Shown in pieces: positions 1 to 48,629 of a DNA stretch of 64,000 nt. The stretch covers positions 1 to 64,000 of the forward strand of contig NW_021825821.1 of NCBI RefSeq assembly GCF_006345805.1. Direction: 5' to 3'. Under the pieces are notes generated by a model. It was not told the DNA's origin. It did no database searches and saw only the letters and a program-made list of their open reading frames with translations. The DNA comes from Octopus sinensis (taxonomy: Eukaryota). Within the stretch, counting starts at the first letter, position 1, and each line of letters begins with the position of its first letter. Both the position numbers and the translations under genes were made by a program.

Positions 1-293
1 CATAAAAAATAGTATAGTTCTTTAACGGTTAGACACCAGGTCTCCGCGTTCGACAGAGGAGTTGTACAATCAAATTCGAAGACGGGTTCCTAATTCACTT
101 ACGTCTCATTCAGATTGTCTACATTTTTTATTTCACAAATAAAATGCAATAATTAATTGTTAAAATCAATGAAAAGACGTTGAAGTTCATCTAAGTCGAC
201 CCCTTCAATCAAATTAGGAATCCCCAGTTTACGTGTTAAAAGCTTTTTATTCTTTTCGACCAAACTTGCGATTTCATCAGTTTCACTAACCAT
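1..293 (-). other. Possible 5' part of an unidentified gene running off the window start
   Basis: Open stretches MVSETDEIASLVEKNKKLLTRKLGIPNLIEG... and EPVFEFDCTTPLSNAETWCLTVKELYYFL. I found no convincing splice model joining them and no recognised family. Confidence 0.25.
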
Positions 294-371
294 ACAAAAT
301 CAAGACTTGCAACCACAATAAGAAAATTCAAATAATGATAAAAAGTCGATTGAAAAAACTAATAAATTATA

Positions 372-4031
<3,660 letters not shown>

Positions 4032-4306
4032 TATAATCCAACAGAGTAACTCTACAAAATTGTAAATTTTACAATTTTCAATAACATTTTTAATTAGAAA
4101 AATATTCAAAAATAATAAATTAATACAATCCTATTTTTATACTAAATTTTTTTCTACTTTCTTATTTTAGGTCATGTTTAGTGCTGTCAATCAAAAGAAA
4201 TTTAAGTATTTAGAAATGTTGCAATTAATAATAAAGATGATTTTACAAATTAAAAAATGATTTTTTTGATATTCAATAATATTTCCAAGACACTAACAGT
4301 TGCTTT

Positions 4307-5070
4307 ATGATTGAAAACGAATTTGACGATTTTATAAGCAAAGTGGACAATATTTGTATATAAATAATCCATAAATTAGCCAAATTAATAAAAGAAATGA
4401 ACTCGTCTGATCAGGAAATTCAAAATAAGGCTCTAAAGGCAGCGGACGACTATTGCTGCACAAACAGTAGACTAAATTAAAATATCATCTTGTTAGAACC
4501 CAACGGAGTCGACAAAACAATTTTTAATACAAAAGAAGTAACAAAAAATTCGGAATTTGGTAAAATTAAAAAATTTTATTAAACAAAGACACGTTCAAGT
4601 CACTAATTGAACAAGACGCAAAACAAAGAAGCCTGGATCGTCAAAAGAGATACGAAGAAGCAAATCAACTCAAAGAAAAAGGCACTGAACACTATAAAAA
4701 CCAAAAATATGATTTATCGTGCGAATATTTTACAAAAGTTGCGCTTTTGGTTGATTGAGAACAGGCAATTGCCAAGGCAAAGGATTATTCCCAAGTGTAT
4801 GGACTGCGTGCACAAGTCTACCTGATACTTAAACAATATAAAAATGCTTTAAAAGACTGTGAAACATGCTTTCAAGTTTTGCGAAATTACTCACCATAGT
4901 TAGAAGACTGGAATAAAAAAGTATGCGTTAGAAAGCTGAAATGTCTGCTGGCTCTACGGGAAAACGAAGAAGCTGCTGAATTTTTGCATATCTGCGTGAA
5001 CAAATATCCCGATTATAAGGAAATTTTTAATCTTAAATACGACCAATTTCGGAACACTCTTAACAAATAA
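4307..5070 (+). CDS. TTC12: TTC12-like TPR protein, short form without the ARM region (copy 1)
   Basis: Spliced translation MIENEFDDFISKVDNISKLIKEMNSSDQEIQNKA...ANQLKEKGTEHYKNQKYDLSCEYFTK|AIAKAKDYSQVYGLRAQVYL matches the TTC12 N-terminus and TPRs. Introns of 24-27 nt; stop TAA at 5068-5070. Confidence 0.8.
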
Positions 5071-5201
5071 TTTAAAATTTTCTCTTAATTAATAAAATTA
5101 AAAATGATATAAGTTTAAAATAATAGCAATAATATAAATGTTTAAAATATTTGGACATAACGTGGCAGCTATATTGTCTTTAGTGCAGTTTACAATAACA
5201 A

Positions 5202-7409
5202 ATGCAAACTACAATATTCAAAGAACTAACTTATTACAATTTATCTACAGTAAAAGCACTCCCTGATGTACTTTGAATATAATAATAATCACAGTGGCTC
5301 CCCGACAGGCAACGAAGGAGGCTGAACAGAGACAACGCAGGTTTTGAAAATAATATTAACGTAAAGACATTCGAGAACGGATACAACTCGTGCAAGATCT
5401 GAATATGCCTTCAACTTGCCACAACCTGGTGATTACCCCCGACAATTCATATTTGTGGGCCACTGGTTTGTTCTGCTATAATATTCCAGGCAGTTATAAA
5501 CCTGTGGTTAAGTGTTTTGACCTGAAAGGAATGGTTCTTAAATTTGAGCGTGGAGTCGACCACGTAGTCAAACGTGTGTGCTCCCTTTCAGACGACTACT
5601 CAAAAGTGCTGGTTATTTTACGCATTTCAGCCTGCCTTTTTGATGGCTGATCGTTTTGTTGAATTCCACAACAGCAATGGTCTTCACTATCGGCTGAGGA
5701 CTCCACGGCAAGGATATGACCTGTCTTTTTATCAGCGGGGAGGAGAACTGTACATACCCTCGGGGTCTCCTCAAATTTATCGTGTCAATCTCCATTTGGG
5801 AAGATTTATGACACCCTTGGAGACTTCTGCTCGGTATTTAAATTTTTATTAACTAATTTATAAAATAGTTATGTTAATTGTTCTGACATATCTCCCCACC
5901 ACAATCTTCTACTTTGTGCCACTGTGGATGGATTCGTGGAAGCATGCGATCCCAGAAGTGCGAAATTCGTAAGCAGACTAAACATCAAGGAGGGACTGTC
6001 TCTAACAACAGTAAAATGGCTCGACGAACTACATTTTGGCGTCGGAACTTCTTCTGGCCTTGTACAGATTAGATTTGATGTACTTTAGGTTTATCTGTAT
6101 GACGTAAGGTCGAGTGTGCCCGTCCAGGTGAAGGACCACCATTATGGGCATTCCATAGTCAGTATGTCGTACCATTCTCAACAACGACTTGTTTTCTCTA
6201 TGGATTCCAAATCTTTGAGAGTTTGGAACGAAATTGGAGTATGTGATTTTTTTAAACTGTGTAGGGGGATACTGTCTGTAATATCGAGGGGGATGTTCCT
6301 TACAATTGTTTTTGTCGGTATCCAGACTCCGGACTTGTTTTGATTGGGTCAGACCAACCTGATATAGAGACGATATTCGTTCCTGTTTTTTGTTTCTCAT
6401 TTAATTCTGAATTAGTCATTCGGGACAGCTCCAAAGTGGTGTTCTTATCTCGACCAAGTCGTAGACACCATTGAAGCTTCCAACAAGGAAAATTCGAGTA
6501 ATTCTTTATTATTAATGGCTAGTCTACGACGACTATAAATTCATGACGAGGAACGATCTCGATTCTGCTGGACTCGGTCATCTCATCGGGACTCGGTATT
6601 TGCGTGCGTACATGCATGGGTTCTTCATCACGACCAAGCTATACGAGAAGGTAGTCTATTCGCGATATTAAAGTTGTCCAAAATTTCCGATGTTGAACCA
6701 GAGTCTCCTCCTTCAGAAGAAATCGTTGAACCAGTCCCACAAAAGCCCCTTTCAAAGGAATCATTTGTCCTCGTGAACAGTCACATTGCAGAGAGAATTG
6801 AGAATGTTGACATTGACGAGTCTAATCGCGTTTGTTCTCAGTATTTGACTAATTTAGTTATTACGTGTATATAAAGACGAACGTTTCTCTTCTCTGTTCA
6901 CCGACCCAGATATGAAAATCGAAAGAGAAAACCCCGATTACGTCATGCATGAAAAGTTGTACTCTAAAGTGTTCAAAATTTCTCAAGTTTTATTTTTTAT
7001 AACCTTAGGATGACCCTGGTGACCGTTTAATGGAGAAGGACGACAGGAATCAACGGTATCATGAGACTTTGAACAGGATGAAGTCAGGAGTTGTTGACCA
7101 CGTCGAGTCACAGTCAAAGTCGTTGATTGTCTGCACTTCTGCACATCTTGATGACGTCTCAGCTGAGAATGCACTAACCTCAAAAGAGTGTGGATATTTT
7201 TTAATGTTTGTAGGCAAGCTATATCCAAGAGGCTCGCAATTTCAAAGCCTGGTGTTTCCCGTGTCAATGGAGGCTTAGCTAAAACATTCAGACCACTAGC
7301 CTCCGTAATATTAAGCTTATTGCTCGCGACGTCATGCACTGTCCTCCAGTTTATAAATTTACAATCATTTCGTCCTGGACTATTCCTTGCTCTGCATTGC
7401 CTGTTCTAA
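5202..7409 (+). CDS. NOL10: Nucleolar protein 10 (copy 1); native C-terminus replaced after 7297
   Basis: MQTTIFKELTYYNLSTVKALPD|WLPDRQRRRLNRDNA|DIRERIQLVQDLNMPSTC; also VKDHHYG, LGPAPKWCSYLDQV and LRAYMHGFF. The read-through past the duplication breakpoint ends at 7409. Confidence 0.85.
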
Positions 7410-15796: not shown

Positions 15797-16986
15797 ATGA
15801 ATAGCATATGGAAAGTTCCTGCAATCATTACGCTAGAAAGGATAAAACCTCGCACCGAACTATTTATATCCGCTTTTCACAGCGGATTTCGGGAGGGAAG
15901 ATCGACTTCTGACATCGTATGGACCCATAGATGGCATTGTTCCGCCATTCAAAGGTTAAAAAATGCGACATACATTCTTGGAATCGATATGTCAAGAGCT
16001 TTTGACTCGATTAATCGTCAGAAATTAATGGCAATCCTCGCAGGATTCCTTGATAAATCTTCTATTCGGATGATCAGGGCACTCTTATCAGAAACCTATC
16101 TATCGGTCAGGGTACGAGACAAGTGCTCTAAACCATTTGAAACAACATCTGGAACACCTCAAGGGGATCCGTTATCTCCTATACTGTTTGTCATATATCT
16201 GGAAGCTGCATTGAGAGAACTAAAACCATACTATGAAGGAAAGATCAATGTGGTGGCATACGCGGATGACGTGAATTTTATTTCTTCTGACAGAAACGCT
16301 CTGGAAAGCCTACTGGAGGTGATGCCAAATAGACTTGCTGAGTGGTTCCTCAATGTAAATGTGGAGAAAACAGAATTTACTGAACTAGCAAGACAGAAGT
16401 CTAAGCTGGACAAACATTGGAGAAAAGTAAGGAAACTCGGATCTCTATTGGGAGACGAACAAGACGTGATTATGCGAAAACACATGCAAACAGTGCACTA
16501 CGCAGCTTGAAGGAAATTTGGCTAAAACGCAAAGGACTCAGCACAAAAACACGGATACGACTATAAAATTCACTAGTGAAGCCAATACTCCTATATAACG
16601 CCGGAACTTGGGAACTTTCCGCTACAGACAATGACAACCTAGACTCTTTCCATAGAGATCACCTCCGATGTACTCTAGCCTCCAAGTGGCATTCAAGGCT
16701 GAGTAGCAGAAGAGTTTATGCCAGAACATCAAGCAAACGAATCTCACTCGAAATTACCGAATGCAGATGGAGGCTGTTTGGACACATTCTAAGGATGGAT
16801 TTGGATGCTCCGGCAAACGCCGCTATGGAGGACTATTTCGAAGCTGGGGGCCATCGTTTCCGTGGGCGACCAAGAAATACTCTCCCGGGTACGCTGGATA
16901 GAGACCTAATAAGGGCTGGTAAAGAATTGAAGGACGGGGACGATCTCGATGCACTACGGGACGTCGCTCAAGATCGCGGGAAATAA
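15797..16986 (+). mobile_element. RTE-like non-LTR retrotransposon RT region, frameshifted
   Basis: SGFREGRST, GIDMSRAFD, GTPQGDPLSP, YADD and RWRLFGHILRM motifs split across two frames. Confidence 0.9.
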
Positions 16987-17099
16987 ACTAATTACTCGTA
17001 TTGTTTCCTGTGCTGCACAAGCTTTGTCATGATCCATGGCATCGCGAAAGTGCCTATAATAATCGGCCATAAAAGATCTAAGACCATATTATAAAGGTG

Positions 17100-18130
17100 G
17101 AACCGAGGAAAGAATTTATGCCGATGACGTGGACTTGATATCCGAAGCCAAATCCTCATTAATAGAACTTCTCGAACTTGCACCGTAGCAATTAAAAAAA
17201 TGGTTCCTTTATGTAAACAAAGAAAAAACTGATCTTGTGGGAGTAACAAGATCAAATGACAAAATCGATGAAAGATGGCGCCATGTACAAAAACTTGGCT
17301 CTCTTCTGGGAGACAGTGAGGATATTGCAAGGAGAAAAATGCTGGTATCTACAGCAATGCACAAACTCTGGAAGGAATGGCTATCATATGGATCAGCGAA
17401 TGTTGACCCGTGTTAATGTATAACTCCTCCACTTGGAGTTGCACAGATACGGAACTGACACGTCTTAACAGTTTCCACAGAGGACAATTGAGAAAACTGC
17501 TCAAAATGCAGTGGTCCTATAGAATATCCCGGGAGTCGTTATACAGAAAGTGTTCTACAAGACCACTTTGCATTGACATTGCTGAATCCCGCTGGAAGCT
17601 ATTTGAACACATACTGAGAATGGACCACTCCGCACCCGCAAATACGGTGATGGAAGATTACTTCCAATGCGACAAACCACGGTTCCGGGGACGCCTACGC
17701 ACTACGTTACTTGTCGTTCTGAACGCGGACCTTGCCCAAATCAAATCCTGTCTCAAGACCTATGATGACTTGGACAGGCTGTGGCTCACAACGCTTTACC
17801 GAGGAAAATGCAGATGTGATATGGGGACATAGCTGGATCTGGTCAGAAATTTAAAATAGCGAATAAAATGTTTGGCGCTGATATGAGCAAAACATTTGAA
17901 ACGCTCCTCAGAGACAAGCTAATAGAAGTTTTCAAAACTATTCTTGACGATGACTTGATAAGAATGGTTTAAGCACTTTCTATGGACACTGAGTTGATAG
18001 TAAAAGTCGGGTCCGTAGAATAAAAGTCTTTCAAAACAAATATTGGAACACTCCAAGGTGATTCTGTATTATTCATCGTTTATTTTGAAGAGGAACTAAG
18101 AAATCTAAGAAAACAATTAATATTCAGCTA
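17100..18130 (+). mobile_element. Further degenerate RTE-like fragments
   Basis: YADDVDL-like segment, KLGSLLG, RWKLFEHILRM (ORF 17410-17832) and a GTPQGDS remnant near 18050. Confidence 0.75.
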
Positions 18131-21429: not shown

Positions 21430-22560
21430 TTCTTCTTCCCTATTATTAGATATTCTTTTTAAAACAATCTTCGTCTCTTATGCCCAACTATCATAGTCGG
21501 TACATAGAGGTCCTCGTCCATTCGTATTCCTGATTCAGAAGAATGTTTCGGTTGACACTCAATCACTGCTTGCTCCTTTTTGGGAACCGATATTCCATGT
21601 CTTGTCTCCACCTGCATAATCTCCAATGTTTTTCTTAAAACGAGTGTTTGGATATATGCCTTCACTCTGTCTTCCACTGCGATAGAATCCAGATGACTTT
21701 TGAAGAATCTTGAGACAATTCCATCCCAAGTAAGTACAACAGGGATTATCTTCCCTTTGCCCGATGAATCGCCCCTAATTCATTTGCCAAAAGGTCATAT
21801 TTGTGGAAATTTACCACTTCAACTTGCTTTAGGCAATTTTGTGAGGTAATCCCAACATCAATGAGTGTAATTGTATTCCTCATCTTGTCATGGACAAAAA
21901 TATCTGGTTTATTGTTTGAAACAGCCGTATCCGTAGAAATAGTTGTGTCCACTCGAATTTCCACAACTTCATTGGCGACAACAGATTGAACTGAGTGAGT
22001 TTTTAATTTCTTCGTTTCTCTTATCCCGTATTGGCGGCATAAATGCAAATGTAGACATTTGACAACTTTATTATGCCCTCTTAGGTAAGAGCTGTTCAGC
22101 ATTCGTCCACATCTGGTAGCAAGGTGATCAACGGTCTTCTTTGCTGAGTTGCAGTGATTGCATTTATTTTCTCCGTTATCAAAAAACAAATTTCGATTCT
22201 GTAGTAGAAAACACATTCCTTCAGTTTTTGCAGAGTTGTTTCCATGAACTAGCCACTCTGCAGATTCATTAACATTAACTTCACTGTCCTTCAAACACTG
22301 GAAAAGAATAGAATGCAGTGGGTTAGTTTCAATCTGCCTCATTAGATATTCCCTCATTAGATAATCTGCCTCATTAGATAATCTGCCTTATGTTGAATTT
22401 CCACCAATTTCGTTATTGTCAGTTCATTTATATTTTCGATATTGTACTTTCGGGATATGAATTCTACGATAGTGGCCATATGAGTTTTCTTTGAATTAAC
22501 GACTCGTACGATAGTGGCCTCTCTTCTTAGGCAGTAATCGGTTTTATGCTTCAAGTCATG
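21430..22560 (-). mobile_element. RLE-type (R4/NeSL-like) non-LTR retrotransposon, 3' half
   Basis: CCHC knuckle CNHCNSAKKTVDHLATRC; PD-(D/E)xK core NKPDIFVHDK...LIDVGIT; KYDLLANEL. Confidence 0.88.
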
Positions 22561-22854
22561 ATAAAATTGGAATAGCCTAGAGGGGCCATTCCCCCCCGGT
22601 TGAGAACACCTGACCTAAAGAATGCTGGATTCCTACTAGAAAATGCAGACGATCTAGATAGCTTTCAAAAAATCGCAATCACAAGAAAAGCGTTAAGGTG
22701 TCTAACAGACAAAATTTTCCAGGGTGTGGCACAAGCGACAAAAGGACTATGACTTTCTTATTGTCACTGATGTGATAATGATAATATAACTGAAAAATGA
22801 CAGATGGTTTGAGATAGAAAATAAAATAAAAATATACCATATCAATGACCACCT

Positions 22855-24861
22855 GGAACCATTCGAAGGAACACCCAGAGGACTTAATAAAGACATCACC
22901 CGCTATGAAGTCCTTTCAGCCTTGAGCAAGCTGAAAAATGGCAGAGCTTCGGGACCAGACAACGTGACTGCAGAGTTATTAAAATACGCGCCGGACAGAG
23001 TGGTTGAGTTGATCTGCACAGTCCTGAACAGGACGTTCAACTACGTTACCTGGGAGTAACTATAGACCCCTCCGGGTCATACAAACCCCATGTGCATGCA
23101 AAGCGGAAACAAGGAGCGAAAATCCTAAAAGGACTGAAGCGTTTTTGTCTAAGCGCAGAAACGTTTCTACACATCTACCAGACTTGTGTTCAGCCACTAA
23201 TAATCTATGGCTCGGAGGGCTGGTACCAAACTGATGAAAGGGACCTTCTAATCGCCAAACTCGAAAAAACCAGACGATTTGCCATCAAACTGGCATTCGG
23301 CCTGGAGCTCAGCAGTCCGCTGGAAGACCTGCATGAGCGGAGTGTTGACACGATTGACGCGATCCTGGCAAAAACTCGAACTCGCTAAGGGAGATAAGAC
23401 AGTCTCCTGGGGCAAAACCGAAGTTGAGACCTTCGTGGCTCTCGTTATCGAGCCCCCTAAGCTCTAATTCCTCGGCCACTTTTCTTTTGGACCTATTGTA
23501 ATAAATAAACCATATTCATTCAAACCTGGAAAGGAGAAAGGAAATCTAAACAGCCTACGCCCGGTTACGCTAATGAATACGCTAAGGAAAATACTTTCCC
23601 TTGTTGTGCTGGATCGTATTTCAGGACCTGTAAATAAGTTCCTAAACCCGAGTCAAAGTGGATTCAGACCTGGAAGGTCGACAGCAGACGTAGTATGGAG
23701 CCACAGATGGCTGTGTGCAATGTGCCAGAAACACAAAGAAAAAATCTCAATCCTTGGAATTGATCTATCCCGTGCTTTCGATACAATCAACCGCAAAAAG
23801 CTGATGCATGTATTGGAAGGCATCCTAGATGGGGATGCATTACGTATGATCAGATTCTTACTCGCCAACACATCGCTATCCGTGCGTGTGGGAAACTATA
23901 CCTCGATGAAGTTTAAAACCGACACTGGCGTACCTCAGGGCGACTCGTTATCTCCGGTTCTATTCATAATCTACCTGGAGGCAGCCCTAAGACCTCTTCG
24001 GAGGAATAAATGCTTTACCAACGTGATGGAAGTAACTTACGCCGACGATATTGATTTCGTCTCCCGAGATCAGGACTCACTGGAAAACTTATTAAAAGTG
24101 ATCCCTCATTCGTTGGAGGACTGGTCCCTTGTAATAAACCCGGACAAAACGGAAAGAACTACCATATCCCGCCTGGGGACGAGAAACGAGGAGAAGTGGA
24201 GAACATGCAAGAAAGTTGGATCTCTCCTTGGGGACTCGGAGAACGTTATTCGTAGGAAAGTGCTGGCTGTTGCATCCTTCAAAAAAATGTGGACGATCTG
24301 GATGAGGCGCAAGTACATAAGAACTCTCCTTCGAATTCGGCTGTACAACTCCTTTGTCGAACCAATCTTGCTTTACAACGCGGGGACCTGGGGCCTAACC
24401 GCTAAAGAACTGGAGCAGCTCAACTCTTTCCACAGAAAACAACTACGACTACTCCTGGGAATTCACTGGCCAAAAAAGATGACCAATAATGAACTCTACA
24501 GAATCACCCATACATCCGAGATTGCAAAGAAAGTGATGTTCACGAAGTGGATGCTCTTTGGACATGTCCTAAGAGCCTCGGAAATGACGCCGGTCAATCA
24601 GAACATGGAATCCTACTTCTGCTCATTAAATAAAACGGCATATAGGGGCCGACAAAGAACAACATTACCGACTACGCTCGACCATGATCTCACGTCGATT
24701 GGAAGGAAACTGAAATCGGCCGATGATCTGGACGAACTGAGATACCTCGCACCTAACAGGGGAGCGTGGATACGACTAACAGAGCGTATCCTGAGTCGGA
24801 TGGCAAAAGTGGAATCTTAATTAACTTTTTGATTTCGCGAGATTGCTTTAATAATAATAAT
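22855..24861 (+). mobile_element. RTE-like LINE copy B1, interrupted at ~23042-23520; RT ORF 23573-24820 open; (TAA)n tail
   Basis: LKNGRASGPD linker; 415-aa RT with GVPQGDSLSP and YADD; AAT-repeat tail ending at 24861. Confidence 0.92.
23042..23520 (+). mobile_element. 5'-truncated 3' end of the APE LINE family, forming an inverted repeat with ~24885-25362
   Basis: Near-identical to the reverse complement of the LINE 3' end. Replaces ~48 bp that are present in RTE copy B2. Confidence 0.9.
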
Positions 24862-27604
24862 AGAGAATAGAAGAAGAATAGAATATGGTTTATTTAATAC
24901 AATAGGTCCAAAAGAAAAGTGGCCGAGGAATTAGAGCTTAGGGGGCTTGATAACGAGAGCCACGAAGGTCTCAACTTCGGTTTTGCCCCAGGAGACTGTC
25001 TTATCTCCCTCAGCGAGTTCGAATTTTTGCCAGGATTGCGTCAATCGTGTCAACACTCCGCTCATGCAGGTCTTCCACCGGACTGCTGAGCTCCAGGCCG
25101 AATGCCAGTTTGATGGCAAATCGTCTGGTTTTTTCGAGTTTGGCGATTAGAAGGTCCCTTTCATCAGTTTGGTACCAGCCCTCCGAGCCATAGATTATTA
25201 GTGGCTGAACACAAGTCTGGTAGATGTGTAGAAACGTTTCTGCGCTTAGACAAAAACGCCTCAGTCCTTTTAGGATTTTCGCTCCTTGTTTCCGCTTTGC
25301 ATGCACATGGGGTTTGTATGACCCGGTGGGGTCTATAGTTACTCCCAGGTAACGTAGGTTCTTCGATATAATCAGGTTCCCATAATCCTCGAAAGTCGGT
25401 TTTTTGTCACGACCCATTGAAATCCAACAAATGGTACTTTTGTCTAGAGCGAGATTCAAGCCTTTACCATTGCACCAGATTTCAAGTTCCTCCAAGTACG
25501 GTTCTAGTCTGCTCCAGGACAGCCTTCTTCTGTGTCGGGGTCCCCACATCGAGACATCCGTAACCAAGATATCGTCCGCGTAGATAATTAGTCTGCTCGT
25601 AGGAAAATGTGGTTTCGGGACGTCAGCCAGAAATATATTAAAGAACAAGGGGCTGAGAACCGATCCCTGAGGAACACCTCTCCTCAGATTCACGGCCTTC
25701 GATAGCAAATTTCCACAACGAATGAACGATTTTCTCTCACACAAGAAGTCCTTAAGCCATCTGACAGTTTTTCGCCCAGCACCCAACTCCGCTACTTTAT
25801 CTAACAACCCCAAGTGCCAGACACTGTCAAAGGCCTTGCAGACGTCCAGGCAGACCGCCGTTAGGCAGGCTTTATGTTGTTTGGCCCGAGTCAGTTCTTC
25901 CTCAAGAAGCGAGAAACAGTGACCGGTTGATCGACCAGGTCTAAAACCCCACTGTTCCTCCGCGAGTATATTATTTTGTTCCACGTAAGCCGATAAACGA
26001 TTGAAAATAATTCTTTCCATTATCCTCGACGTTGTGCAGATAAGGCTAATTGGCCTATAACTTCCTGCCTGCGTATTTGGTTTTCCAGGTTTTGGGATCA
26101 TTCGGACGATTGTTCGTTTCCAGCTAGGTGGGACGTGACCATTGTCCCAACTGGCATTGAATAGTTTTACCAGAATACGAAGCAAGCATCCAGGTGCCTT
26201 CTTGAAAACCTCCATAGGGATGAAGTCAAATCCAGGAGCGTTGTTCTTGCAACCTCTGATTGCTTCGAACGTCTCTTCCGTGGTTATTTCTCTGCACAAG
26301 GGTCCATCCAAAACAAGTTTTGAGAGGGAATTTCGGGTCGACTCCTCGAATATTTTCAGAGGCAGGATAGACGAAGGGTCTACCTCCTGAATCCCTGCTA
26401 GCTGCTGGTGGAAGACCTCCGGGACTTCCTCAGTAGGAACAAAGCCTCCATCACCGATTTAAGAATGATTTCTTCTCCTTTCGCTTCCGTCCCGTTCATT
26501 ATTTTGTATAGTTTCCAGAATTTAGGATTTTTCATGTTGAGTTTTAAGCATTCTCTCTTCCATGCCTCATCTGTGTTAGCTTTAATCAGCTCGTCGATCC
26601 GACTCTTCAGGGTGTTGATTCGGGCCTTTAGACTTCCAGAGTCCTCCGATTCAAAACACCTCCTTCTTTTGCTTTCCAGTCGCGCCTTGTCTCTGACTAG
26701 CTCAGATAGTCTAGTTTCGGACCTCTTCGCGCAAGATCCCTGGGATTTCATATGTTTTTTAGAAGCGAATCTGTCCAGAAAGGCCACCACATGCTTTCGT
26801 ATGGCCATATCGAGATGATCAATACTTTCACTCGTGGACAGATGCATGTGGGAGAGAGGTTCCAAAGCTGCACCCATGAATATGGCGAACATGGGCCATT
26901 GCACAGGGGACAAGTCGTATCCCGTGAAGAGATCTGATACCAACTCCGTAGATGTCCGCAACAACATTGATTGGGTCAGATGGTCACTCCCAGTCCGCAT
27001 TTCTATCCGGGGCCTGTCGCAAAAAGGGCTCACAGACGCGGAAGAAAGAAATAGTCCGAGGCGACCTCCACTGAAGCAGAAATGATTAAGTTCCTCAGAA
27101 GTCCAGACATTAAGGTCATATTTCCTCGCGATCCTCAGTAAAGCCCGACCATCTTGGTTAGAGGTCTCGCATCCATAAGCGGTATTTTTGGCGTTGAGAT
27201 CTCCCGCAAGAATGGCCATCTCATTATCCTCAAAGAACTTCCTGATCACTTCAGGGTAGTTTCTGAGGTCCTTCGAGTACATTCCACCGATTGTTATCCA
27301 TCCAATGGAAGTTAGGAGTTCTAGTGCGATCAGTTCGCATCGGTTCTCTTCAAGGATCCTCAAGTTCTTTACAACAATGTCGGCTTTGTAGTAAAGCGAG
27401 GATCCCGTTCCCGCAATCGCCCCCGACCTCCATGGAATGTGGAGGGATCTATAGCCTTCGAATTTGATCTGCCGAGGCCCCTTCATTTTGGTTTCGTTCA
27501 CAATTAGGACATCTGTCTTTGCCAAGGTCAGAAGGGACCTCAGCTCCGTTGCCCGTCTCGTGAGAGACCGGGCATTGATAAGCGTTATCACGCTCACACT
27601 TGAT
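24862..27604 (-). mobile_element. Near-complete ORF2 of an APE-RT LINE (Jockey/I/CR1-like) with one frameshift near 26458
   Basis: APE motifs NARSL, NETK, GDLNAK and SDH; RT motifs EQWGFRPGRST, GVPQGSVLSP and YADD; TTC/TTCTA-type 3' tail. Inserted in the RTE (TAA)n tail, with the empty site at 32414-32431. Confidence 0.92.
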
Positions 27605-27610
27605 TTGGTA

Positions 27611-27717
27611 ATAAACAACTTGCTGGGCAAACCAGAGAATTCGGGATTCTTCGTTCTCGACAAAAACCCCGTACTTCGGATCAGTCAGTTCGTGGAACAA
27701 CAACATGAAAAATTCCT
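27611..27717 (-). other. Captured 107-bp HERC fragment (one HECT exon plus 9 nt of the following intron) at the LINE 5' end
   Basis: 103/107 identical to 1358-1464 and to its copy near 34413-34519. Confidence 0.92.
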
Positions 27718-27833
27718 CACACTTGATAATATCATGGGTTGGATAATACCCTCTCGAAGGTGCACCGTTGCTGCGAAAGGTTCAAAAGGTGCTAATATTC
27801 ACATGATTGAGTGTATTGGTTCGGGTAGATTAA

Positions 27834-29739
27834 TCTTAATAATAAAATGGTATGGTGTGTGTGTGTCTGTCTGTCTGTCGTTCTGTCTGTCTGTCTGTGT
27901 GTGCACACCAACTTCAAATTGGCAATACGATGTCCTCGACTTACATGATGAGGTCCTTAAAACCTTCCCTCCAAAAAAAAATTAAAAAAAATTTTCTGCA
28001 TTTTCGTTAAAATGAACAACTACGATGTCCTCGACTTACATGATGAGGTCCTTAAAACCTTCCCCCTAAAAAAAAATTAAAAAAAATTTTTCTGCATTTT
28101 GGTCAAAATGAACAACTACGATGTCCTCGACTTACATGATGAGGTCCTTAAAACCTCCCCCCCAAAAAAAATTAAAAAAAAATTTTCTGCATTTTGGTTA
28201 AAATGAACAACTACGATGTCCTCGACTTACATGATGAGGTCCTTAAAACCTTCCCCCCAAAAAATTAAAAAAAAATTTTCAGCATTTTGGTTAAAATGAA
28301 CAACTACGATGTCCTCGACTTACATGATGAGGTCCTTAAAACCTTCTCCCCAAAAAAAATTAAAAAAAAATTTTCTGCATTTTGGTTAAAATGAACAACT
28401 ACGATGTCCTCGACTTACATGATGAGGTCCTTAAAACCTTCTCCCCAAAAAAAATTAAAAAAAAATTTTCTGCATTTTGGTTAAAATGAACAACTACGAT
28501 GTCCTCGACTTACATGATGAGGTCCTTAAAACCTTCCCGCCAAAAAATCAAAAAATTATTTTCTGCATTTGATTAAAATGAACAACGTTAATGTCCTCGA
28601 CATTCATGATGAGGTCCATTAAAACCTTCGAGGCAAAAATCTCACGTATTAAGAATATCCTTGATGAAAACGACAGCAAGAATATTAACAATGCCACTGC
28701 TGACTCTTAATTAGCTATTTTGGTTAAGTTTTTTTTTCGATAAAAAAATTAAAGCTATTATCATATTTGACTTTGAATAGAGTGTGCAATTAACAGATTT
28801 TGAAAAACCACTTTGATAGTTGAAACCACATTAGCACAATCATTAAGACAATTTACCACCAATTGACAGCGCAATCTGAAGAATTTGCGTAAAAATATTC
28901 ACTATTTAGTTAAGTTTTTCGTAAAGATAAAATTTATTTTCGGTATGTCTCTTTTCCTAAACTTTTTTATTATTCAAAAATAATTTTTTCAATAGATAAC
29001 CGAAGGAGGGAAGACGACCTTAAGAAAATAAGTTTTTCGTAAAGATAGAATTTATTTTCTGTATGCCTCTTTTTTCCTAATATTTTTTATTATTCAAAAA
29101 TAATTTTTTAAATAGATAACCGAAGGAAGAAAAACGAAGCTGAAGAAAAAACGGGCACCTTAAGGTAATTAATTAAATCTTTTTTGTGTGTCGCTTTTTT
29201 GGCTGCTGCTACTCTGCCTGCCCCATTTCCGCCAGTGGTTTTATTACGAAATCTTGCGCCACCTAAATTATGCAACGGAACGAGGTTAGTTATCAAAAAT
29301 TTAATGGCTAACGTAATAGAGGCGACGATATTAACAGGTAAGTATAGAGGTGAGGATGTATATATTCCACGAATTCCGATAATTTCTGATGAATTACCAT
29401 TTAGATTTAAAAGGCTGCAATTTCCTTTGAGGATGAGTTTTGCAATGACAATAAACAAGGCCCAGGGACAGTCATTAAAGGTAGTTGGGTTATTTTTAGA
29501 GAATGAGTGCTTTTCACATGGACAGCTGTATGTGGGATGCTCGAGGGTAGGCAGAAGAGAAAATTTATTCATATATGCCAAGGAAGGACGGACGACAAAC
29601 ATCGTTTATCAACAGGCGATAGAATAGGGTTACATTAAATCAGGTAGTTTTATACATCTACATAAACTTATAGTTGTTTGATGAAACAGGCCCTCCGCAG
29701 GAGCTAGGTCGCGGTGAGCGAAGCGAGCTGCCGAGCTAG
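27834..29739 (+). mobile_element. Non-autonomous Helitron
   Basis: 5' TC and 3' CTAG, inserted between A and T with no TSD (empty site GATTAA|TACATT at 32533/32534). PIF1 helicase C-terminus at 29184-29627 (LCNGTRL, FAMTINKAQGQS, FSHGQLYVGCSRV). GC-rich subterminal motif. Confidence 0.95.
27920..28625. repeat. ~95-bp minisatellite, about 8 units, inside the Helitron
   Basis: TACGATGTCCTCGACTTACATGATGAGGTCC recurs at 27926, 28021, 28117, 28212, 28305, 28400, 28495 and, degenerate, near 28587. Units differ mainly in homopolymer lengths. Confidence 0.97.
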
Positions 29740-30260
29740 TACATTATAATGCTAAAAAAAAGCAATTTGTCGATGCAATTGAATGGATGAGCTCATGTTT
29801 AAGAAATGCTTACAATACCGACAAAAAAACATGTTGCAGTTATCTTGGATAAGGCCCCCTGCCATTCTTGTATTGAAGAAATTTTATTAGAAAAGGAATT
29901 TAAAATTCATAAATTTTTAAGAATAGCTCCTTACAGTTCAATGGTTAATCCTATTAAACATATTTGGTCTGTAGTAAAAGCCGATATAAAAAACCTTGCT
30001 GAAAAAAGAGCAGATTTATTAAGTGATGAAGTTCGTGAAAATTTATCATTAAGAGAATATTCTCTTGAATTTTTAGAAAAATTTATTGAAAAAGGCAAAC
30101 TTTTAATCGTTCCTAATTTGTCTTGTGTTAATTGTTTGCCCATATACAAGGAAAAGTACCGGCGGCATTAGCTTTAAAAAACATGCAATTTTAATGATTT
30201 TTTTAAAGTTTTAAAAATTTACTAACTTTTTTTCCATTTAGTTTGAAACTATTATAATAT

Positions 30261-30862
30261 GTCGCGAGCGCAGCGAGCGACCGAGCGCAGCGAGCGACCA
30301 CTCAATTTCTAGATCCGATCAATCAAAAAATCTATAAATTGACAAATACCCAGGCTTGTATTTGGGATTAAATATATTCGATAACAAAAATTAAAATCGA
30401 TGCCAAAGCAGAATGAGCTTTAAAACCGATTCATAAATAAAAATAATATTTTAAAATTTATAATTGATATTTTAGAATAATGAGAAAAAATCTAAATGCT
30501 TCATAATTTATAAAATGTCAAACAAACGAATCTTCTGAAGGAGCAAGCTGTCTGCACAGTTCATTTTTGATTAGAAGACCTAATTTTAGAGATTAAAACG
30601 AAAAAATAGCAATGAGATCTGTCAAATTATTACCCCCTCACAACCTAAACCAATTAGCGTTCAGTATTCATTGATTTTACTTTTTCTATTAAGGTCTACT
30701 TATAAATTATTTTATGGGATTCAATGGAAAACTTAAGTTATTTCAATTTTAATTTTAAATCATGTTAAAATTTTAAATAATTTAATAAATATATTTGTTG
30801 ATGATAGGCTTGTTAGGTGTCAAAGTCGCGTCTAGCGCTCGGTCGCGCGCTGCGCTCGCGAC
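30261..30862. mobile_element. MITE with GC-rich TIRs, superfamily unassigned
   Basis: TIR GTCGCGAGCGCAGCG(A/C)GCGACCGAGCGC. Flanked by ATAATAT direct repeats (30254-30260 and 30863-30869). Empty site ATAATGT in copy B2 near 33049. Confidence 0.88.
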
Positions 30863-30931
30863 ATAATATATCATAAAAAATAGTATAGTTCTTTAACGGT
30901 TAGACACCAGGTCTCCGCGTTCGACAGAGGA

Positions 30932-32430
30932 TTGAGCAAGCTGAAAAATGGCAGAGCTTCGGGACCAGACAACGTGACTGCAGAGTATTAAATACGCGCC
31001 GGACAGAGTGGTTGAGTTGATCTGACAGTCCTGAACAGGACGTTCAAATGTCACAGCCCATTTGATGCGGGGAATGCCACTTTAATCCCATCCAGAACCT
31101 GGAAAGGAGAAAGGAAATCTAAACAGCCTACGCCCGGTTACGCTAATGAATACGCTAAGGAAAATACTTTTCCTTGTTGTGCTGGATCGTATTTCAGGAC
31201 CTGTAAATAAGTTCCTAAACCCGAGTCAAAGTGGATTCAGACCTGGAAGGTCGACAGCAGACGTAGTATGGAGCCACAGATGGCTGTGTGCAATGTGCCA
31301 GAAACACAAAGAAGAAATCTCAATCCTTGGAATTGATCTATCCCGTGCTTTCGATACAATCAACCGCAAAAAGCTGATGCATGTATTGGAAGGCATCCTA
31401 GATGGGGATGCATTACGTATGATCAGATTCTTACTCGCCAACACATCGCTATCCGTGCGTGTGGGAAACTATACCTCGATGAAGTTTAAAACCGACACTG
31501 GCGTACCTCAGGGCGACTCGTTATCTCCGGTTCTATTCATAATCTACCTGGAGGCAGCCCTAAGACCTCTTCGGAGAAACAAATGCTTTACCAACGTGAT
31601 GGAAGTAATTTACGCCGACGATATTAATTTCGTCTCCCGAGATCAGGACTCACTGGAAAACTTATTAAAAGTGATCCCTCATTCGTTGAAGGACTGGTCC
31701 CTTGTAATAAACCCGGACAAAACGGAAAGAACTACCATATCCCGCCTGGGGACGAGAAACGAGGAGAAGTGGAGAACATGCAAGAAAGTTGGATCTCTCC
31801 TTGGGGACTCGGAAAACGTTATTCGAAGGAAAGTGCTGGCTGTTGCATCCTTCAAAAAAATGTGGACGATCTGGATGAGGCGCAGGTACATAGGAACCCG
31901 CCTTCGAATTCGGCTGTACAACTCCTTTGTCGAACCAATCTTGCTTTACAACGCGGGGACCTGGGGCCTAACCGCTAAAGAACTGGAGCAGCTCAACTCT
32001 TTCCACAGAAAACAACTACGACTACTCCTGGGAATTCACTGGCCAAAAAAGATGACCAATAACAATGAACTCTACAGAATCACCCATACATCCGAGATTG
32101 CAAAGAAAGTGATGTTCACGAAGTGGATGCTCTTTGGACATGTGGAGCTCTTGACGCCGGTCCAATCAGAACATGGAATCCTACTTCTGCTCATTATAAA
32201 ACGGCATATAGGGGCCGACAAAGAACAACATTACCGACTACGCTCGACCATGATCTCACGTCGATTGGAAGGAAACTGAAATCGGCCGATGATCTAAACG
32301 AACTGAGATACCTCGCACGTAACAGGGGAGCGTGGATACGACTAACAGAGCGTATCCTGAGTCGGATGGCAAAAGTGGAATCTTAATTAACTTTTTGATT
32401 TCGCGAGATTGCTTTAATAATAATAATAAT
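30932..32430 (+). mobile_element. RTE-like LINE copy B2 (5'-truncated, frameshifted)
   Basis: Near-identical to B1 without its insertions; ORF 31146-32279; (TAA)n tail. Confidence 0.92.
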
Positions 32431-32965
32431 ATCATGGGTTGGATAATACCCTCTCGAAGGTGCACCGTTGCTGCGAAAGGTTCAAAAGGTGCTAATATTC
32501 ACATGATTGAGTGTATTGGTTCGGGTAGATTAATACATTATAATGCTAAAAGAAAAGCAATTTGTCGATGCAATTGAATGGATGAGCTCATGTTTAAGAA
32601 ATGCTTACAATACCGACAAAAAAACATGTTGCAGTTATCTTGGATAAGGCCCCCTGCCATTCTTGTATTGAAGAAATTTTATTAGAAAAGGAATTTAAAA
32701 TTCATAAATTTTAAGAATAGCTCCTTACAGTTCAATGGTTAATCCTATTAAACATATTTGGTCTGTAGTAAAAGCCGATATAAAAAACCTTGCTGAAAAA
32801 AGAGCAGATTTATTAAGTGATGAAGTTCGTGAAAATTTATCATTAAGAGAATATTCTCTTGAATTTTTAGAAAAATTTATTGAAAAAGGCAAAATTTTAA
32901 TCGTTCCTAATTTGTCTTGTGTTAATTGTTTGCCCATATACAAGGAAAAGTACCGGCGGCATTAG
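32431..32965 (+). mobile_element. IS630-Tc1 remnant copy B2 (no Helitron)
   Basis: Near-identical to 27728-27833 joined to 29740-30171. Confidence 0.85.
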
Positions 32966-33429
32966 CTTTAAAAAACATGCAATTTTAATGATTTTTTTAA
33001 AGTTTTAAAAATTTACTAACTTTTTTTTCCATTTAGTTTGAAACTATTATAATGTATCATAAAAAATAGTATAGTTCTTTAACGGTTAGACACCAGGTCT
33101 CCGCGTTCGACAGAGGAGTTGTACAATCAAATTCGAAGACGGGTTCCTAATTCACTTACGTCTCATTCAGATTGTCCACATTTTTTATTTTACAAATAAA
33201 ATGCAATAATTAATTGTTAAAATCAATGAAAAGACGTTGAAGCTCATCTAAGTCGACCCCTTCAATCAAATTAGGAATCCCCAGTTTACGTGTTAAAAGC
33301 TTTTTATTCTTTTCGACCAAACTTGCGATTTCATCAGTTTCACCAACCATAAAAAAATCAAGACTTGCAACCACAATAAGAAAATTCAAATAATGATAAA
33401 AAGTCGATTGAAAAAAGTAATAAATTATA

Positions 33430-37086
<3,657 letters not shown>

Positions 37087-37361
37087 TATAATCCAACAGA
37101 GTAACTCTACAAAATTGTAAATTTTACAATTTTCAATAACATTTTTAATTAGAAAAATATTCAAAAATAATAAATTAATACAATCCTATTTTTATACTAA
37201 ATTTTTTTCTACTTTCTTATTTTAGGTCATGTTTAGTGCTGTCAATCAAAAGAAATTTAAGTATTTAGAAATGTTGCAATTAATAATAAAGATGATTTTA
37301 CAAATTAAAAAATGATTTTTTTGATATTCAATAATATTTCCAAGACACTAACAGTTGCTTT

Positions 37362-38125
37362 ATGATTGAAAACGAATTTGACGATTTTATAAGCAAAGTG
37401 GACAATATTTGTATATAAATAATCCATAAATTAGCCAAATTAATAAAAGAAATGAACTCGTCTGATCAGGAAATTCAAAATAAGGCTCTAAAGGCAGCGG
37501 ACGACTATTGCTGCACAAACAGTAGACTAAATTAAAATATCATCTTGTTAGAACCCAACGGAGTCGACAAAACAATTTTTAATACAAAAGAAGTAACAAA
37601 AAATTCGGAATTTGGTAAAATTAAAAAATTTTATTAAACAAAGACACGTTCAAGTCACTAATTGAACAAGACGCAAAACAAAGAAGCCTGGATCGTCAAA
37701 AGAGATACGAAGAAGCAAATCAACTCAAAGAAAAAGGCACTGAACACTATAAAAACCAAAAATATGATTTATCGTGCGAATATTTTACAAAAGTTGCGCT
37801 TTTGGTTGATTGAGAACAGGCAATTGCCAAGGCAAAGGATTATTCCCAAGTGTATGGACTGCGTGCACAAGTCTACCTGATACTTAAACAATATAAAAAT
37901 GCTTTAAAAGACTGTGAAACATGCTTTCAAGTTTTGCGAAATTACTCACCATAGTTAGAAGACTGGAATAAAAAAGTATGCGTTAGAAAGCTGAAATGTC
38001 TGCTGGCTCTACGGGAAAACGAAGAAGCTGCTGAATTTTTGCATATCTGCGTGAACAAATATCCCGATTATAAGGAAATTTTTAATCTTAAATACGACCA
38101 ATTTCGGAACACTCTTAACAAATAA
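37362..38125 (+). CDS. TTC12: TTC12-like TPR protein, short form (copy 2)
   Basis: Same sequence as 4307-5070. Confidence 0.8.
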
Positions 38126-38256
38126 TTTAAAATTTTCTCTTAATTAATAAAATTAAAAATGATATAAGTTTAAAATAATAGCAATAATATAAATGTTTAA
38201 AATATTTGGACATAACGTGGCAGCTATATTGTCTTTAGTGCAGTTTACAATAACAA

Positions 38257-40447
38257 ATGCAAACTACAATATTCAAAGAACTAACTTATTACAATTTATC
38301 TACAGTAAAAGCACTCCCTGATGTACTTTGAATATAATAATAATCACAGTGGCTCCCCGACAGGCAACGAAGGAGGCTGAACAGAGACAACGCAGGTTTT
38401 GAAAATAATATTAACGTAAAGACATTCGAGAACGGATACAACTCGTGCAAGATCTGAATATGCCTTCAACTTGCCACAACCTGGTGATTACCCCCGACAA
38501 TTCATATTTGTGGGCCACTGGTTTGTTCTGCTATAATATTCCAGGCAGTTATAAACCTGTGGTTAAGTGTTTCGACCTGAAAGGAATGGTTCTTAAATTT
38601 GAGCGTGGAGTCGACCACGTAGTCAAACGTGTGTGCTCCCTTTCAGACGACTACTCAAAAGTGCTCATTATTTTACGCATTTCAGCCTGCCTTTTTGATG
38701 GCTGATCGTTTTGTTGAATTCCACAACAGCAATGGTCTTCACTATCGGCTGAGGACTCCACGGCAAGGATATGACCTGTCTTTTTATCAGCGGGGAGGAG
38801 AACTGTACATACCCTCGGGGTCTCCTCAAATTTATCGTGTCAATCTCCATCTGGGAAGATTTATGACACCGCTGGAGACTTCTGCTCGGTATTTAAATTT
38901 TTATTAAAATAGTTATGTTAATTGTTCTGACATATCTCCCCACCACAATCTTCTACTTTGTGCCACTGTGGATGGATTCGTGGAAGCATGCGATCCCAGA
39001 AGTGCCAAATTCGTAAGCAGACTAAACATCAAGGAGGGACTGTCTCTAACAACAGTAAAATGGCTCGACGAACTACATTTTGGCGTCGGAACTTCTTCTG
39101 GCCTTGTACAGATTAGATTTGATGTACTTTAGGTTTATCTGTATGACGTAAGGTCGAGTGTGCCCGTCCAAGTGAAGGACCACCATTATGGGCATTCCAT
39201 AGTCAGTATGTCGTACCATTCTCAACAACGACTTGTTTTCTCTATGGATTCCAAATCTTTGAGAGTTTGGAACGAAATTGGAGTATGTGATTTTTTTAAA
39301 CTGTGTAGGGGGATACTGTCTGTAATATCGAGGGGGATGTTCCTTACAATTGTTTTTGTCGGTATCCAGACTCCGGACTTGTTTTGATTGGGTCAGACCA
39401 ACCTGATATAGAGACGATATTCGTTCCTGTTTTTTGTTTCTCATTTAATTCTGAATTAGTCATTCGGGACAGCTCCAAAGTGGTGTTCTTATCTCGACCA
39501 AGTCGTAGACACCATTGAAGCTTCCAACAAGGAAAATTCGAGTAATTCTTTATTATTAATGGCTAGTCTACGACGACTATAAATTCATGACGAGGAACGA
39601 TCTCGATTCTGCTGGACTCGGTCATCTCATCGGGACTCGGTATTTGCGGGCGTACATGCATGGGTTCTTCATCACGACCAAGCTATACGAGAAGGTAGTC
39701 TATTCGCGATATTAAAGTTGTCCAAAATTTCCGATGTTGAACCAGACTCTTCTCCTTCAGAAGAAATCGTTGAACCAGTCCCACAGAAGCCCCTTTCAAA
39801 GGAATCATTTGTCCTCGTGAACAGTCACATTGCAGAGAGAATTGAGAATGTTGACATTGACGAGTCTAATCGCGTTTGTTCTCAGTATTTGACTAATTTA
39901 GTTATTACGTGTATATAAAGACGAACGTTTCTCTTCTCTGTTCACCGACCCAGATATGAAAATCGAAAGAGAAAACCCCGATTACGTCATGCATGAAAAG
40001 TTGTACTCTAAAGTGTTCAAAATTTCTCAAGTTTTATTTTTTATAACCTTAGGATGACCCTGGTGACCGTTTAATGGAGAAGGACGACAGGAATCAACGG
40101 TATCATGAGACTTTGAACAGGATGAAGTCAGGAGTTGTTGACCACGTCGAGTCACAGTCAAAGTCGTTGATTGTCTGCACTTCTGCACATCTTGATGACG
40201 TCTCAGCTGAGAATGCACTAACCTCAAAAGAGTGTGGATATTTTTTAATGTTTGTAGGCAAGCTATATCCAAGAGGCTCGCAATTTCAAAGCCTGGTGTT
40301 TCCCGTGTCAATGGAGGCTTAGCTAAAACATTCAGACCACTTAAAAGACATGAGTCACGAGTAGAGAAGCGTGACAAATATCACAGACAAGAACGGAAGA
40401 ATATACGTCGATCTGCCTCTACGCTTTTTACTAAGAAACGTAAATAA
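38257..40447 (+). CDS. NOL10: Nucleolar protein 10 (copy 2, native C-terminus)
   Basis: As copy 1, but ends HESRVEKRDKYHRQERKNIRRSASTLFTKKRK*, matching the conserved basic NOL10 tail (HRQERKxxRRSA). Confidence 0.92.
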
Positions 40448-48625: not shown

Positions 48626-48629
48626 GCTA

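What the first reader, a model, noticed from the sequence alone, without database searches (positions are those of the whole stretch)
22922..33117. Tandem ~2.2-kb unit: one copy took four insertions, the other preserves the uninterrupted sites
Seen: the unit is an RTE 3' part, its TAA tail, a Tc1 remnant and 60 bp identical to window positions 1-60. B2 (30932-33117) is uninterrupted. B1 (22922-30931) carries a LINE fragment, a 2.9-kb LINE, a 1.9-kb Helitron and a 0.6-kb MITE, growing to 8 kb while the shared sequence stays near-identical. Inference: a 4-versus-0 split over so little divergence implies a very recent transposition burst into a hotspot, or two distinct haplotypes joined in tandem by unequal recombination or by the assembler.
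Basis: partly seen in the sequence, partly recalled or inferred. Interest (0 to 1): 0.7.

Follow-up and report, generated by a model that had tools for sequence, protein, structure and literature searches.

The report
Filled and empty copies, octopus repeat block
In a transposon-rich stretch of octopus DNA, a 2.2-kb block sits twice in tandem, one copy carrying four ordinary mobile-element insertions and the other showing the untouched sites; this is routine, and the tandem join may be an assembly error that stacked the two parental versions of a single locus.

Summary
B2 (30932-33117) is uninterrupted. B1 (22922-30931) is the same 2,186 bp plus four insertions, each with textbook ends:
- a 481-bp LINE 3' fragment;
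- a 2,863-bp near-intact LINE of the same family;
- a 1,906-bp Helitron;
- a 602-bp MITE.

- Window 1-7297 repeats 33058-40341, so the "60 bp" is the tip of a 7.3-kb second duplication.
- B1 and B2 differ by 0.9% in substitutions. That equals X/X' outside a 5.2-kb tract with no substitutions, and is close to the 1.22% heterozygosity reported for Octopus vulgaris.
- The differences are patchy: 1.25% in the RTE part and 0.15% in the rest.
- B2 alone carries about 7-8 small indels, three of them within 95 bp of the junction.
- The block's edges lie 116 and 64 bp outside the outermost insertions (P about 0.02-0.04).
- A 4:0 split is itself not significant (P=0.125).

No burst or hotspot need be invoked for the split. 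I cannot decide between two alleles stacked by the assembler (0.48) and a real tandem duplication (0.42). Reads would settle it. The finding is ordinary either way.

The parts
1..60 (+). Last 60 bp of a further copy of the unit (B0), cut by the window start
   Evidence: 100% identical to 33058-33117, and the match continues into X.
61..7297 (+). X: first copy of the 7.2-kb segment that follows the unit
   Evidence: Window 1-7297 matches 33058-40341 at 99.55%. There are 18 substitutions and none between 360 and 5517.
22839..22921 (+). L: 83 bp of the same LINE lying 5' of the duplicated block, present only before B1
   Evidence: Continuous with O. sinensis copies of the LINE family across 22921|22922, so L-B1 is the ancestral continuity.
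22922..30931 (+). B1: the filled copy of the 2,186-bp unit (8,010 bp)
   Evidence: Five collinear pieces match B2. Its RT ORF 23573-24820 is intact at 415 aa.
23041..23521 (+). ins1: 5'-truncated LINE 3' fragment with a 41-bp target deletion
   Evidence: 98% identical to the reverse complement of 24876-25357. It ends in an ATTC-type short repeat. B2 and both O. sinensis copies keep the 41 bp.
24863..27725 (-). ins2: near-full-length APE+RT LINE (RTE-like) inserted in the (TAA)n tail
   Evidence: Pfam Exo_endo_phos and RVT_1 hits. One frameshift separates the two ORF halves. About 3 bp of extra TAA repeat compared with the empty site.
27834..29739 (+). ins3: non-autonomous Helitron carrying a 95-bp satellite and a helicase remnant
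   Evidence: 5'-TC and 3'-CTAG ends between host A and T, with no target duplication. Empty site in B2. The Pif1 2B hit is just below cut-off.
30261..30862 (.). ins4: 602-bp MITE
   Evidence: Inverted ends GTCGCGAGCGCAGCG... (0.1 matches expected by chance). 7-bp ATAATAT duplication at 30254-30260 and 30863-30869.
30931..30932 (.). The only novel junction, GAGGA|TTGAGC: blunt, no microhomology, no gap
   Evidence: Sequence read directly. The window contains no N.
30932..33117 (+). B2: the uninterrupted copy, preserving all four empty sites (31047|31048, within 32415-32430, 32533|32534, 33049-33055)
   Evidence: Its RT frame is broken by B2-private small indels.
33073..33186 (-). Old inverted LINE fragment spanning the unit/X' boundary
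   Evidence: 74% match to 31855-31984. It shows that B-X continuity is ancestral and that B1's right end is a breakpoint.
33118..40341 (+). X': second copy of the 7.2-kb segment, contiguous with B2
   Evidence: Homology to X stops sharply at 40341 / 7297.

Best explanation
B1 and B2 are the filled and empty states of one ancestral 2.19-kb segment of octopus DNA. That segment is a 5'-truncated RTE-like LINE, its (TAA)n tail, and 687 bp of flank holding a Tc1-type remnant.

Four independent, canonical transposon insertions turned the empty state into the filled one. This step is shown directly by the sequence.

My preferred reading of the tandem arrangement is inferred. The two states are the two parental alleles of a single-copy block, heterozygous for a cluster of insertions. 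The assembler failed to merge them and laid them end to end, which is a heterotype false duplication. On this reading the real locus is U-L-B-X'-R. The separate 7.3-kb B-X copy 33 kb upstream is a true older segmental duplication with a gene-conversion tract.
For: - The duplicated block begins 116 bp before the first insertion site and ends 64 bp after the last. Four random sites in 2,186 bp do this with P=0.017-0.036. This is expected if the block is defined by where two haplotypes stop aligning.
- Substitution divergence is 0.90%, close to the 1.22% heterozygosity reported for O. vulgaris (PMC10700109).
- Against two O. sinensis outgroup copies, B2 alone has about 7 small indel events for about 11 substitutions. 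The other three sequences together have 4 for 38 (P=0.012). Three one-base deletions lie within 95 bp of the junction.
- Ko et al. 2022 (PMC9516828) list raised heterozygosity, boundaries at homozygous/heterozygous transitions and more erroneous k-mers as marks of false duplications.
- At 9-10 sites B2 keeps the family state where B1 is derived. B2 is therefore a distinct haplotype and not a miscopy of B1.
Against: - The junction is seamless, with no N anywhere in the window. False duplications are most often separated by a gap.
- Overlap-based long-read assemblers need a read that contains a junction before they write it.
- B1, which would also be at half depth, shows no excess of small indels.
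- The neighbourhood certainly holds a further copy of the unit's end plus X. Two haplotypes cannot explain three copies, so real duplication has happened here.
- The statistical oddities were noticed after the fact.
- No read, depth or independent-assembly evidence could be obtained.
Confidence: 0.48

Rival explanations
1. This is a real tandem duplication of the 2.19-kb block, joined bluntly by end-joining. The left copy later received four independent insertions. A separate duplication carried B+X 33 kb upstream. Gene conversion among the copies produced the patchy divergence, so the copies may be older than they look.
For: - The structure is that of a classic tandem duplication. The left copy is continuous with the left flank, the right copy with the right flank, and there is one novel junction.
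- The junction has no gap.
- A second duplicate, X/X', lies in the same place.
- Divergence is mosaic: 1.25% in the RTE part, 0.15% in the rest, and a 5.2-kb tract without substitutions in X. This fits conversion.
- A 4:0 split is not significant (P=0.125).
Against: - The block edges hugging the outermost insertions (P about 0.02-0.04) have no explanation under this model.
- Neither does the B2-private indel excess (P about 0.01).
- Four young insertions in 2.2 kb, with none in the 7.3-kb X pair, needs a local hotspot, a much older age masked by conversion, or luck.
Confidence: 0.3
2. One complex replicative event (template switching of the MMBIR/FoSTeS type) copied L+B from an upstream source locus, jumped back to the start of B, copied B+X, and then rejoined at R. 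This would create B1, B2 and X' together.
For: - B1/B2 divergence (0.90%) and X/X' divergence outside the conversion tract (0.84%) are indistinguishable (Fisher P=0.87).
- The junction is blunt.
- Three small deletions cluster within 95 bp of the junction, as seen near replicative breakpoints (my own knowledge of Carvalho et al. 2013, not checked here).
Against: - It needs a source with L+B upstream of window position 1, which cannot be seen.
- Equal divergence could be coincidence.
- It does not explain the hugging of the insertion sites.
- It does not explain the B2 indels that lie far from the junction.
Confidence: 0.12
3. The copies were made through RNA. A read-through transcript of the LINE carried its downstream flank (3' transduction), and reverse-transcriptase template jumping produced two 5'-truncated copies head to tail.
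For: - The unit has exactly the composition of a 3'-transduced LINE copy: an internal LINE start, the LINE's own tail, then flank.
- Both left ends lie inside the LINE.
- The four-way alignment is a star. Only 2 sites unite B1 with B2, so the split dates to the family's period of activity.
Against: - There is no new tail or target-site duplication at 30931 or 40341.
- X' would need a 7.9-kb transduction.
- The copy would sit exactly next to its relative.
- The LINE part and the flank differ 8-fold in divergence, which a single copying event does not predict.
- There is no A-to-G bias in the private changes.
Confidence: 0.04

Closest known systems
Heterotype false duplication in a pseudo-haploid assembly (Ko et al. 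2022, PMC9516828; purge_dups targets)
   Same: Two adjacent copies at heterozygosity-level divergence. The block is bounded by where the haplotypes differ structurally. One copy is richer in small errors.
   Different: There is no assembly gap between the copies. Read depth and k-mer evidence are unavailable.
Young tandem or segmental duplication with paralog-specific transposon insertions, where the paralogous empty site defines element ends
   Same: Direct adjacent copies, one novel blunt junction, a mosaic identity pattern typical of gene conversion, and a second duplicate nearby.
   Different: The edges of the duplicated block track the insertion sites. All four insertions fall in one copy, and none in the 7.3-kb companion duplicate.
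Recently active octopus TE families (RTE and other LINEs, Helitrons, MITEs; PMC13282606, PMC9115989)
   Same: ins2 is a near-intact APE+RT LINE about 1.7% from a second copy. The Helitron and MITE have clean ends. The unit's LINE family has 96-98.5% identical copies in O. sinensis.
   Different: None of these is shown to be the published RTE-2_OV, which has a 1,109-aa ORF with a zinc finger. ins2 encodes about 880 aa and no zinc finger was detected.
LINE 3' transduction
   Same: The unit is a truncated LINE plus its own tail plus downstream flank.
   Different: There is no terminal tail or target-site duplication, and the copies are adjacent rather than dispersed.

Membership tests
Heterotype false duplication | Haploid-level read depth over both copies and haplotype-specific k-mers | not testable with these tools
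   No reads are available. Exact-protein and DNA look-ups found no independent assembly of the locus.
Heterotype false duplication | Assembly gap or unsupported filler between the two copies | tested here: not met
   The window has no N and the junction is seamless. Three 1-bp deletions within 95 bp of the junction could mark weakly supported sequence, but that is not proof.
Heterotype false duplication | Divergence at the level of heterozygosity, boundaries at homozygous/heterozygous transitions, more errors in the duplicate | tested here: met
   Divergence is 0.90% against a reported 1.22%. Edges lie 116 and 64 bp outside the outermost insertions, P=0.017-0.036. B2 has a private indel excess, P=0.012.
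True tandem duplication | Left copy continuous with the left flank, right copy continuous with the right flank, one novel junction | tested here: met
   The LINE is continuous over 22921|22922. An old inverted LINE fragment spans 33117|33118.
True tandem duplication | Single molecules or independent genomes containing both copies | not testable with these tools
   Only non-orthologous O. sinensis copies of the LINE (L001, L002) could be fetched.
Helitron | 5'-TC and 3'-CTRR ends, inserted between host A and T with no target-site duplication | tested here: met
   TCTTAAT...GAGCTAG lies between GATTAA and TACATT. The uninterrupted site is in B2.
Helitron | Hairpin a few bases upstream of the 3' end | tested here: inconclusive
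   The DNA fold of the last 45 nt is no better than shuffles (z=0.03).
Helitron | Rep/helicase coding capacity or a remnant of it | tested here: inconclusive
   ORF 29184-29627 hits Pif1_2B at 23.7 bits against a cut-off of 23.9. No Rep domain was found.
RTE-clade non-LTR retrotransposon (ins2/ins1 family) | Single ORF with an N-terminal APE endonuclease then RT, about 3 kb, no ORF1, short 3' repeat instead of poly(A) | tested here: met
   Exo_endo_phos and RVT_1 hits in one 2,863-bp element, with one frameshift. The tail is of ATTC/TTC type.
RTE-clade non-LTR retrotransposon (both LINE families) | Placement of the RT inside the RTE clade by phylogeny | not tested
   No reference set was available. 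The label rests on architecture and on the sources' names for homologues, 'endonuclease-reverse transcriptase'.
RTE-clade non-LTR retrotransposon (the unit's LINE) | APE domain upstream of the RT | not testable with these tools
   The copies in the window and both O. sinensis copies are 5'-truncated. No APE domain was found upstream in L001, the copy scanned.
MITE | Terminal inverted repeats, target-site duplication, small size, no coding capacity | tested here: met
   28-36-nt inverted ends, a 7-bp ATAATAT duplication, 602 bp, AT-rich interior. The superfamily was not determined.
Tc1/mariner | DDE transposase domain | tested here: inconclusive
   DDE_3 scores 27.9 bits against a cut-off of 28.6 on ORF 29806-30171. 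Inverted ends and a TA duplication were not examined.
LINE 3' transduction | New tail and target-site duplication at the end of the transduced flank; copy dispersed from its source | tested here: not met
   No tail or duplication at 30931 or 40341, and the copies abut.

The most novel reading that the evidence does not exclude
The tandem is real and the left copy is a genuine local trap for mobile elements. Four families (two LINE events, a Helitron and a MITE) entered 2.2 kb within roughly 0.2-1.7 My. That is more than 100 times the genome-wide density of young insertions, while 7.3 kb next door took none. This would point to a small insertion hotspot created or exposed by the duplication, for example AT-rich or (TAA)n targets or an altered chromatin state.
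Probability: 0.1. Interest if true: 0.4.

Novelty: already known. Interest (0 to 1): 0.18.

Why it matters
There are two modest practical values.
- If the two copies are alleles, this locus gives four ready-made filled/empty markers for genotyping: a near-intact RTE-like LINE, a LINE fragment, a Helitron and a MITE. Those markers bear on the current debate about how active transposons are in Octopus germline and soma (PMC9115989, PMC12988792, PMC13282606).
- It is also a clean example of how a heterozygous cluster of insertions can inflate an assembly.

If the tandem is real, it is one more young duplication with nested insertions. Neither reading changes how these elements or duplications are thought to work.

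Tried and rejected
**Finding the orthologous locus or an independent assembly**
- The best homologue of the B1 ORF (P0001) and its cluster mate (P0233) are O. sinensis proteins. Both loci (L001, L002) are unlinked copies of the LINE family with unrelated flanks. They served as outgroups only.
- Exact-protein look-ups of nine window ORFs, including one that crosses the junction, found nothing.
- A scan for the unit's last 25 bases in metagenome and prokaryote collections found nothing.
- A search with the RCC1-like peptide in X gave only distant HERC4-like hits.
- A concatenated query of the other pseudogene-like peptides gave no hit.

**Other ideas tested and dropped**
- CpG decay as the cause of the higher divergence in the LINE part: rejected. 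Only 2 of 19 differences are CpG-associated and CpG observed/expected is about 1.
- An RNA-editing (A-to-G) signature in the private changes: not seen.
- ins1 and ins2 as one twin-priming event: rejected. Host DNA (1.34 kb) lies between them and they differ at 8 of about 470 sites.
- A MITE-like end at the X|U boundary: no match to the inverted-repeat motif elsewhere in the window.
- A target-site duplication flanking 22839...40341: none.
- tRNA or SINE content in the region: none.
Full report
**What is there.**
The window is octopus DNA. The best protein match to the unit's reverse-transcriptase ORF is an Octopus sinensis protein at 96% identity. Two O. sinensis loci carry copies of the same LINE family at 96-98.5% identity, in unrelated flanks.

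BLAST of 30932-33117 (B2) against the window returns five collinear pieces inside 22922-30931 (B1) and a 60-bp perfect match at window 1-60.

The unit is 2,186 bp and consists of:
- a 5'-truncated RT-encoding LINE (Pfam RVT_1);
- its (TAA)5 tail at 32415-32429;
- 687 bp of flank with a DDE_3 transposase remnant.

**The four insertions are canonical, and B2 shows each empty site.**
- ins1 (23041-23521, plus strand) is the last ~480 bp of a LINE. It ends in a short ATTC-type repeat. It replaces 41 bp that B2 and both O. sinensis copies retain.
- ins2 (24863-27725, minus strand, 2,863 bp) belongs to the same family. It has APE endonuclease and RT domains in one reading frame broken by a single frameshift. 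It sits in the (TAA)n tail. ins1 and ins2 differ at 8 of about 470 sites, so they are separate events.
- ins3 (27834-29739) starts TC, ends CTAG, and lies between A and T of GATTAA|TACATT with no target duplication. It carries a 95-bp satellite and a helicase remnant just under the Pfam threshold. Its 3' hairpin is not better than chance.
- ins4 (30261-30862) has 28-36-nt inverted ends and a 7-bp ATAATAT duplication. B2 has a single ATAATGT at that site.

- Window 1-7297 matches 33058-40341 at 99.55%. The "60 bp" is therefore the cut end of a further copy of the unit (B0), followed by a 7.2-kb segment X that recurs as X' after B2.
- The LINE runs 83 bp further left of B1 (22839-22921) and is continuous with the O. 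sinensis copies across 22921|22922.
- An old inverted LINE fragment (33073-33186) spans the B2|X' boundary.
- So L-B1 and B-X are ancestral continuities. The only novel junction is 30931|30932, which is blunt, without microhomology and without a gap.

**Divergence.**
- B1 and B2 differ by 19 substitutions in 2,120 aligned bases (0.90%), plus about a dozen small indels. CpG decay is not the cause.
- The differences are uneven: 18 in 1,440 bases of the LINE part and 1 in 680 bases of the flank (P=0.011).
- X and X' differ by 18 substitutions, but none lies between 360 and 5517 (simulated P about 0). Outside that tract the divergence is 0.84%, indistinguishable from B1/B2 (P=0.87).
- On the published scale for O. 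vulgaris (JC distance 0.09 = 25 My, PMC13282606), these values mean a split between 0.2 and 1.75 My ago, depending on the segment.
- O. vulgaris heterozygosity is reported as 1.22% (PMC10700109).

**Polarising the changes.**
I used the two O. sinensis copies as outgroups.
- B1 has 9 private substitutions and no small indel, apart from the 41-bp deletion at ins1.
- B2 has 13 private substitutions by the pattern count (about 9 outside the garbled stretch) and about 7 small indel events. Three are one-base deletions within 95 bp of the junction, and there is a garbled 17-to-8-nt stretch.
- B2's indel-to-substitution ratio is an outlier against the other three sequences (P=0.012).
- Only two sites unite B1 with B2. 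B1 is as close to an unlinked O. sinensis copy (1.58%) as to B2 (1.66%). The B1/B2 split therefore dates to about the time the LINE inserted.
- B2 keeps the family state at the sites where B1 is derived. It is a distinct sequence and not a miscopy of B1.

**Is 4:0 remarkable?**
The split is not (P=0.125). The density is.
- O. vulgaris has 10,988 near-full-length insertions at or below 2% divergence in 2.8 Gb. That is about 0.009 per 2.2 kb.
- Under uniformity, only about 0.13 segments of this size in the whole genome would hold three or more.
- All four fall in B and none in the X pair. The probability is 0.003 using all of X, or 0.065 using only its diverged part.
- This clustering is equally unexplained whether the copies are paralogs or alleles. 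It does not by itself argue for a burst.

**Paralogs or alleles?**
Three features point to two alleles stacked by the assembler:
- The block begins 116 bp before the first insertion site and ends 64 bp after the last (P=0.017-0.036).
- Divergence is close to heterozygosity.
- One copy is error-rich, especially next to the junction.

Ko et al. (PMC9516828) describe exactly these properties for false duplications.

Against this reading:
- The same paper finds that false duplicates are most often separated by a gap, and there is none here.
- An overlap-based assembler should not write a junction that no read contains.
- B1, which would also be at half depth, is clean.
- The X/X' pair shows that real duplication has occurred at this spot.

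I put the artefact at 0.48. A real tandem duplication is at 0.42: 0.30 as two separate events, and 0.12 as one template-switching event that made B1, B2 and X' together, which the equal divergences would fit. An RNA-mediated origin is at 0.04. It fits the unit's composition and the star-like tree but lacks a tail, a target duplication and uniform divergence.

**Verdict.**
The biology is ordinary nested transposition on a duplicated or falsely duplicated block. Reads across 30931|30932 and depth over the two copies would decide the matter in minutes, but were not available here.

Noticed in passing
window 48474-50306 (+), ORF 48842-49321: This stretch scores 260 bits to eukaryotic large-subunit rRNA (Rfam RF02543). 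It encloses a reverse-transcriptase ORF. It looks like an rDNA-derived fragment with a LINE, lying outside any rDNA array.
   Followed up: no
window 3289-4109(-) and its copy 36344-37164(-); 10059-10954(+); 12869-13722(-); 15231-15635(-); 51894-53480(-): Intron-less, frameshifted fragments of unrelated genes are packed into 64 kb: RCC1/HERC4-like, GH18 chitinase-like, intermediate-filament rod, ANTH/ENTH and oxysterol-binding protein. They are probably processed pseudogenes. No close parent protein was found.
   Followed up: partly
window 1358-1464 and 34413-34519 versus 27611-27717: A 107-bp piece 96% identical to the extreme 5' end of the 2.86-kb LINE sits in X and X' with no other part of the element. 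That is unusual for a LINE, which normally leaves 3' fragments.
   Followed up: no
window 27926-28629; L001 8002-8157: The Helitron carries a 95-bp satellite repeated 7.4 times at 93% identity. An array about 82% similar occurs at an unrelated O. sinensis locus.
   Followed up: no
window 22922-24862 and 30932-32428 versus L001, L002: The four LINE copies form a star tree. Only 2 sites unite B1 with B2, and B1 is as close to an unlinked O. sinensis copy as to its tandem partner. The 415-aa ORF is intact in both B1 and L002.
   Followed up: yes
window 15797-18128: Fragments of a second RTE-like family, about 49% amino-acid identity to the unit's LINE, are rearranged in several pieces.
   Followed up: no
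window 21746-22357(-), 41464-41766(-), 46812-47138(-), 62456-62755(-): A repeated ORF family with no Pfam hit, probably the C-terminal part of an unclassified retroelement. One copy lies 480 bp upstream of the unit's LINE.
   Followed up: no
window 7270-7304: A 7-bp inverted repeat, GGAGGCT...AGCCTCC, straddles the point where X stops matching X' (7297|7298). The X' side has no counterpart. This may be chance.
   Followed up: no
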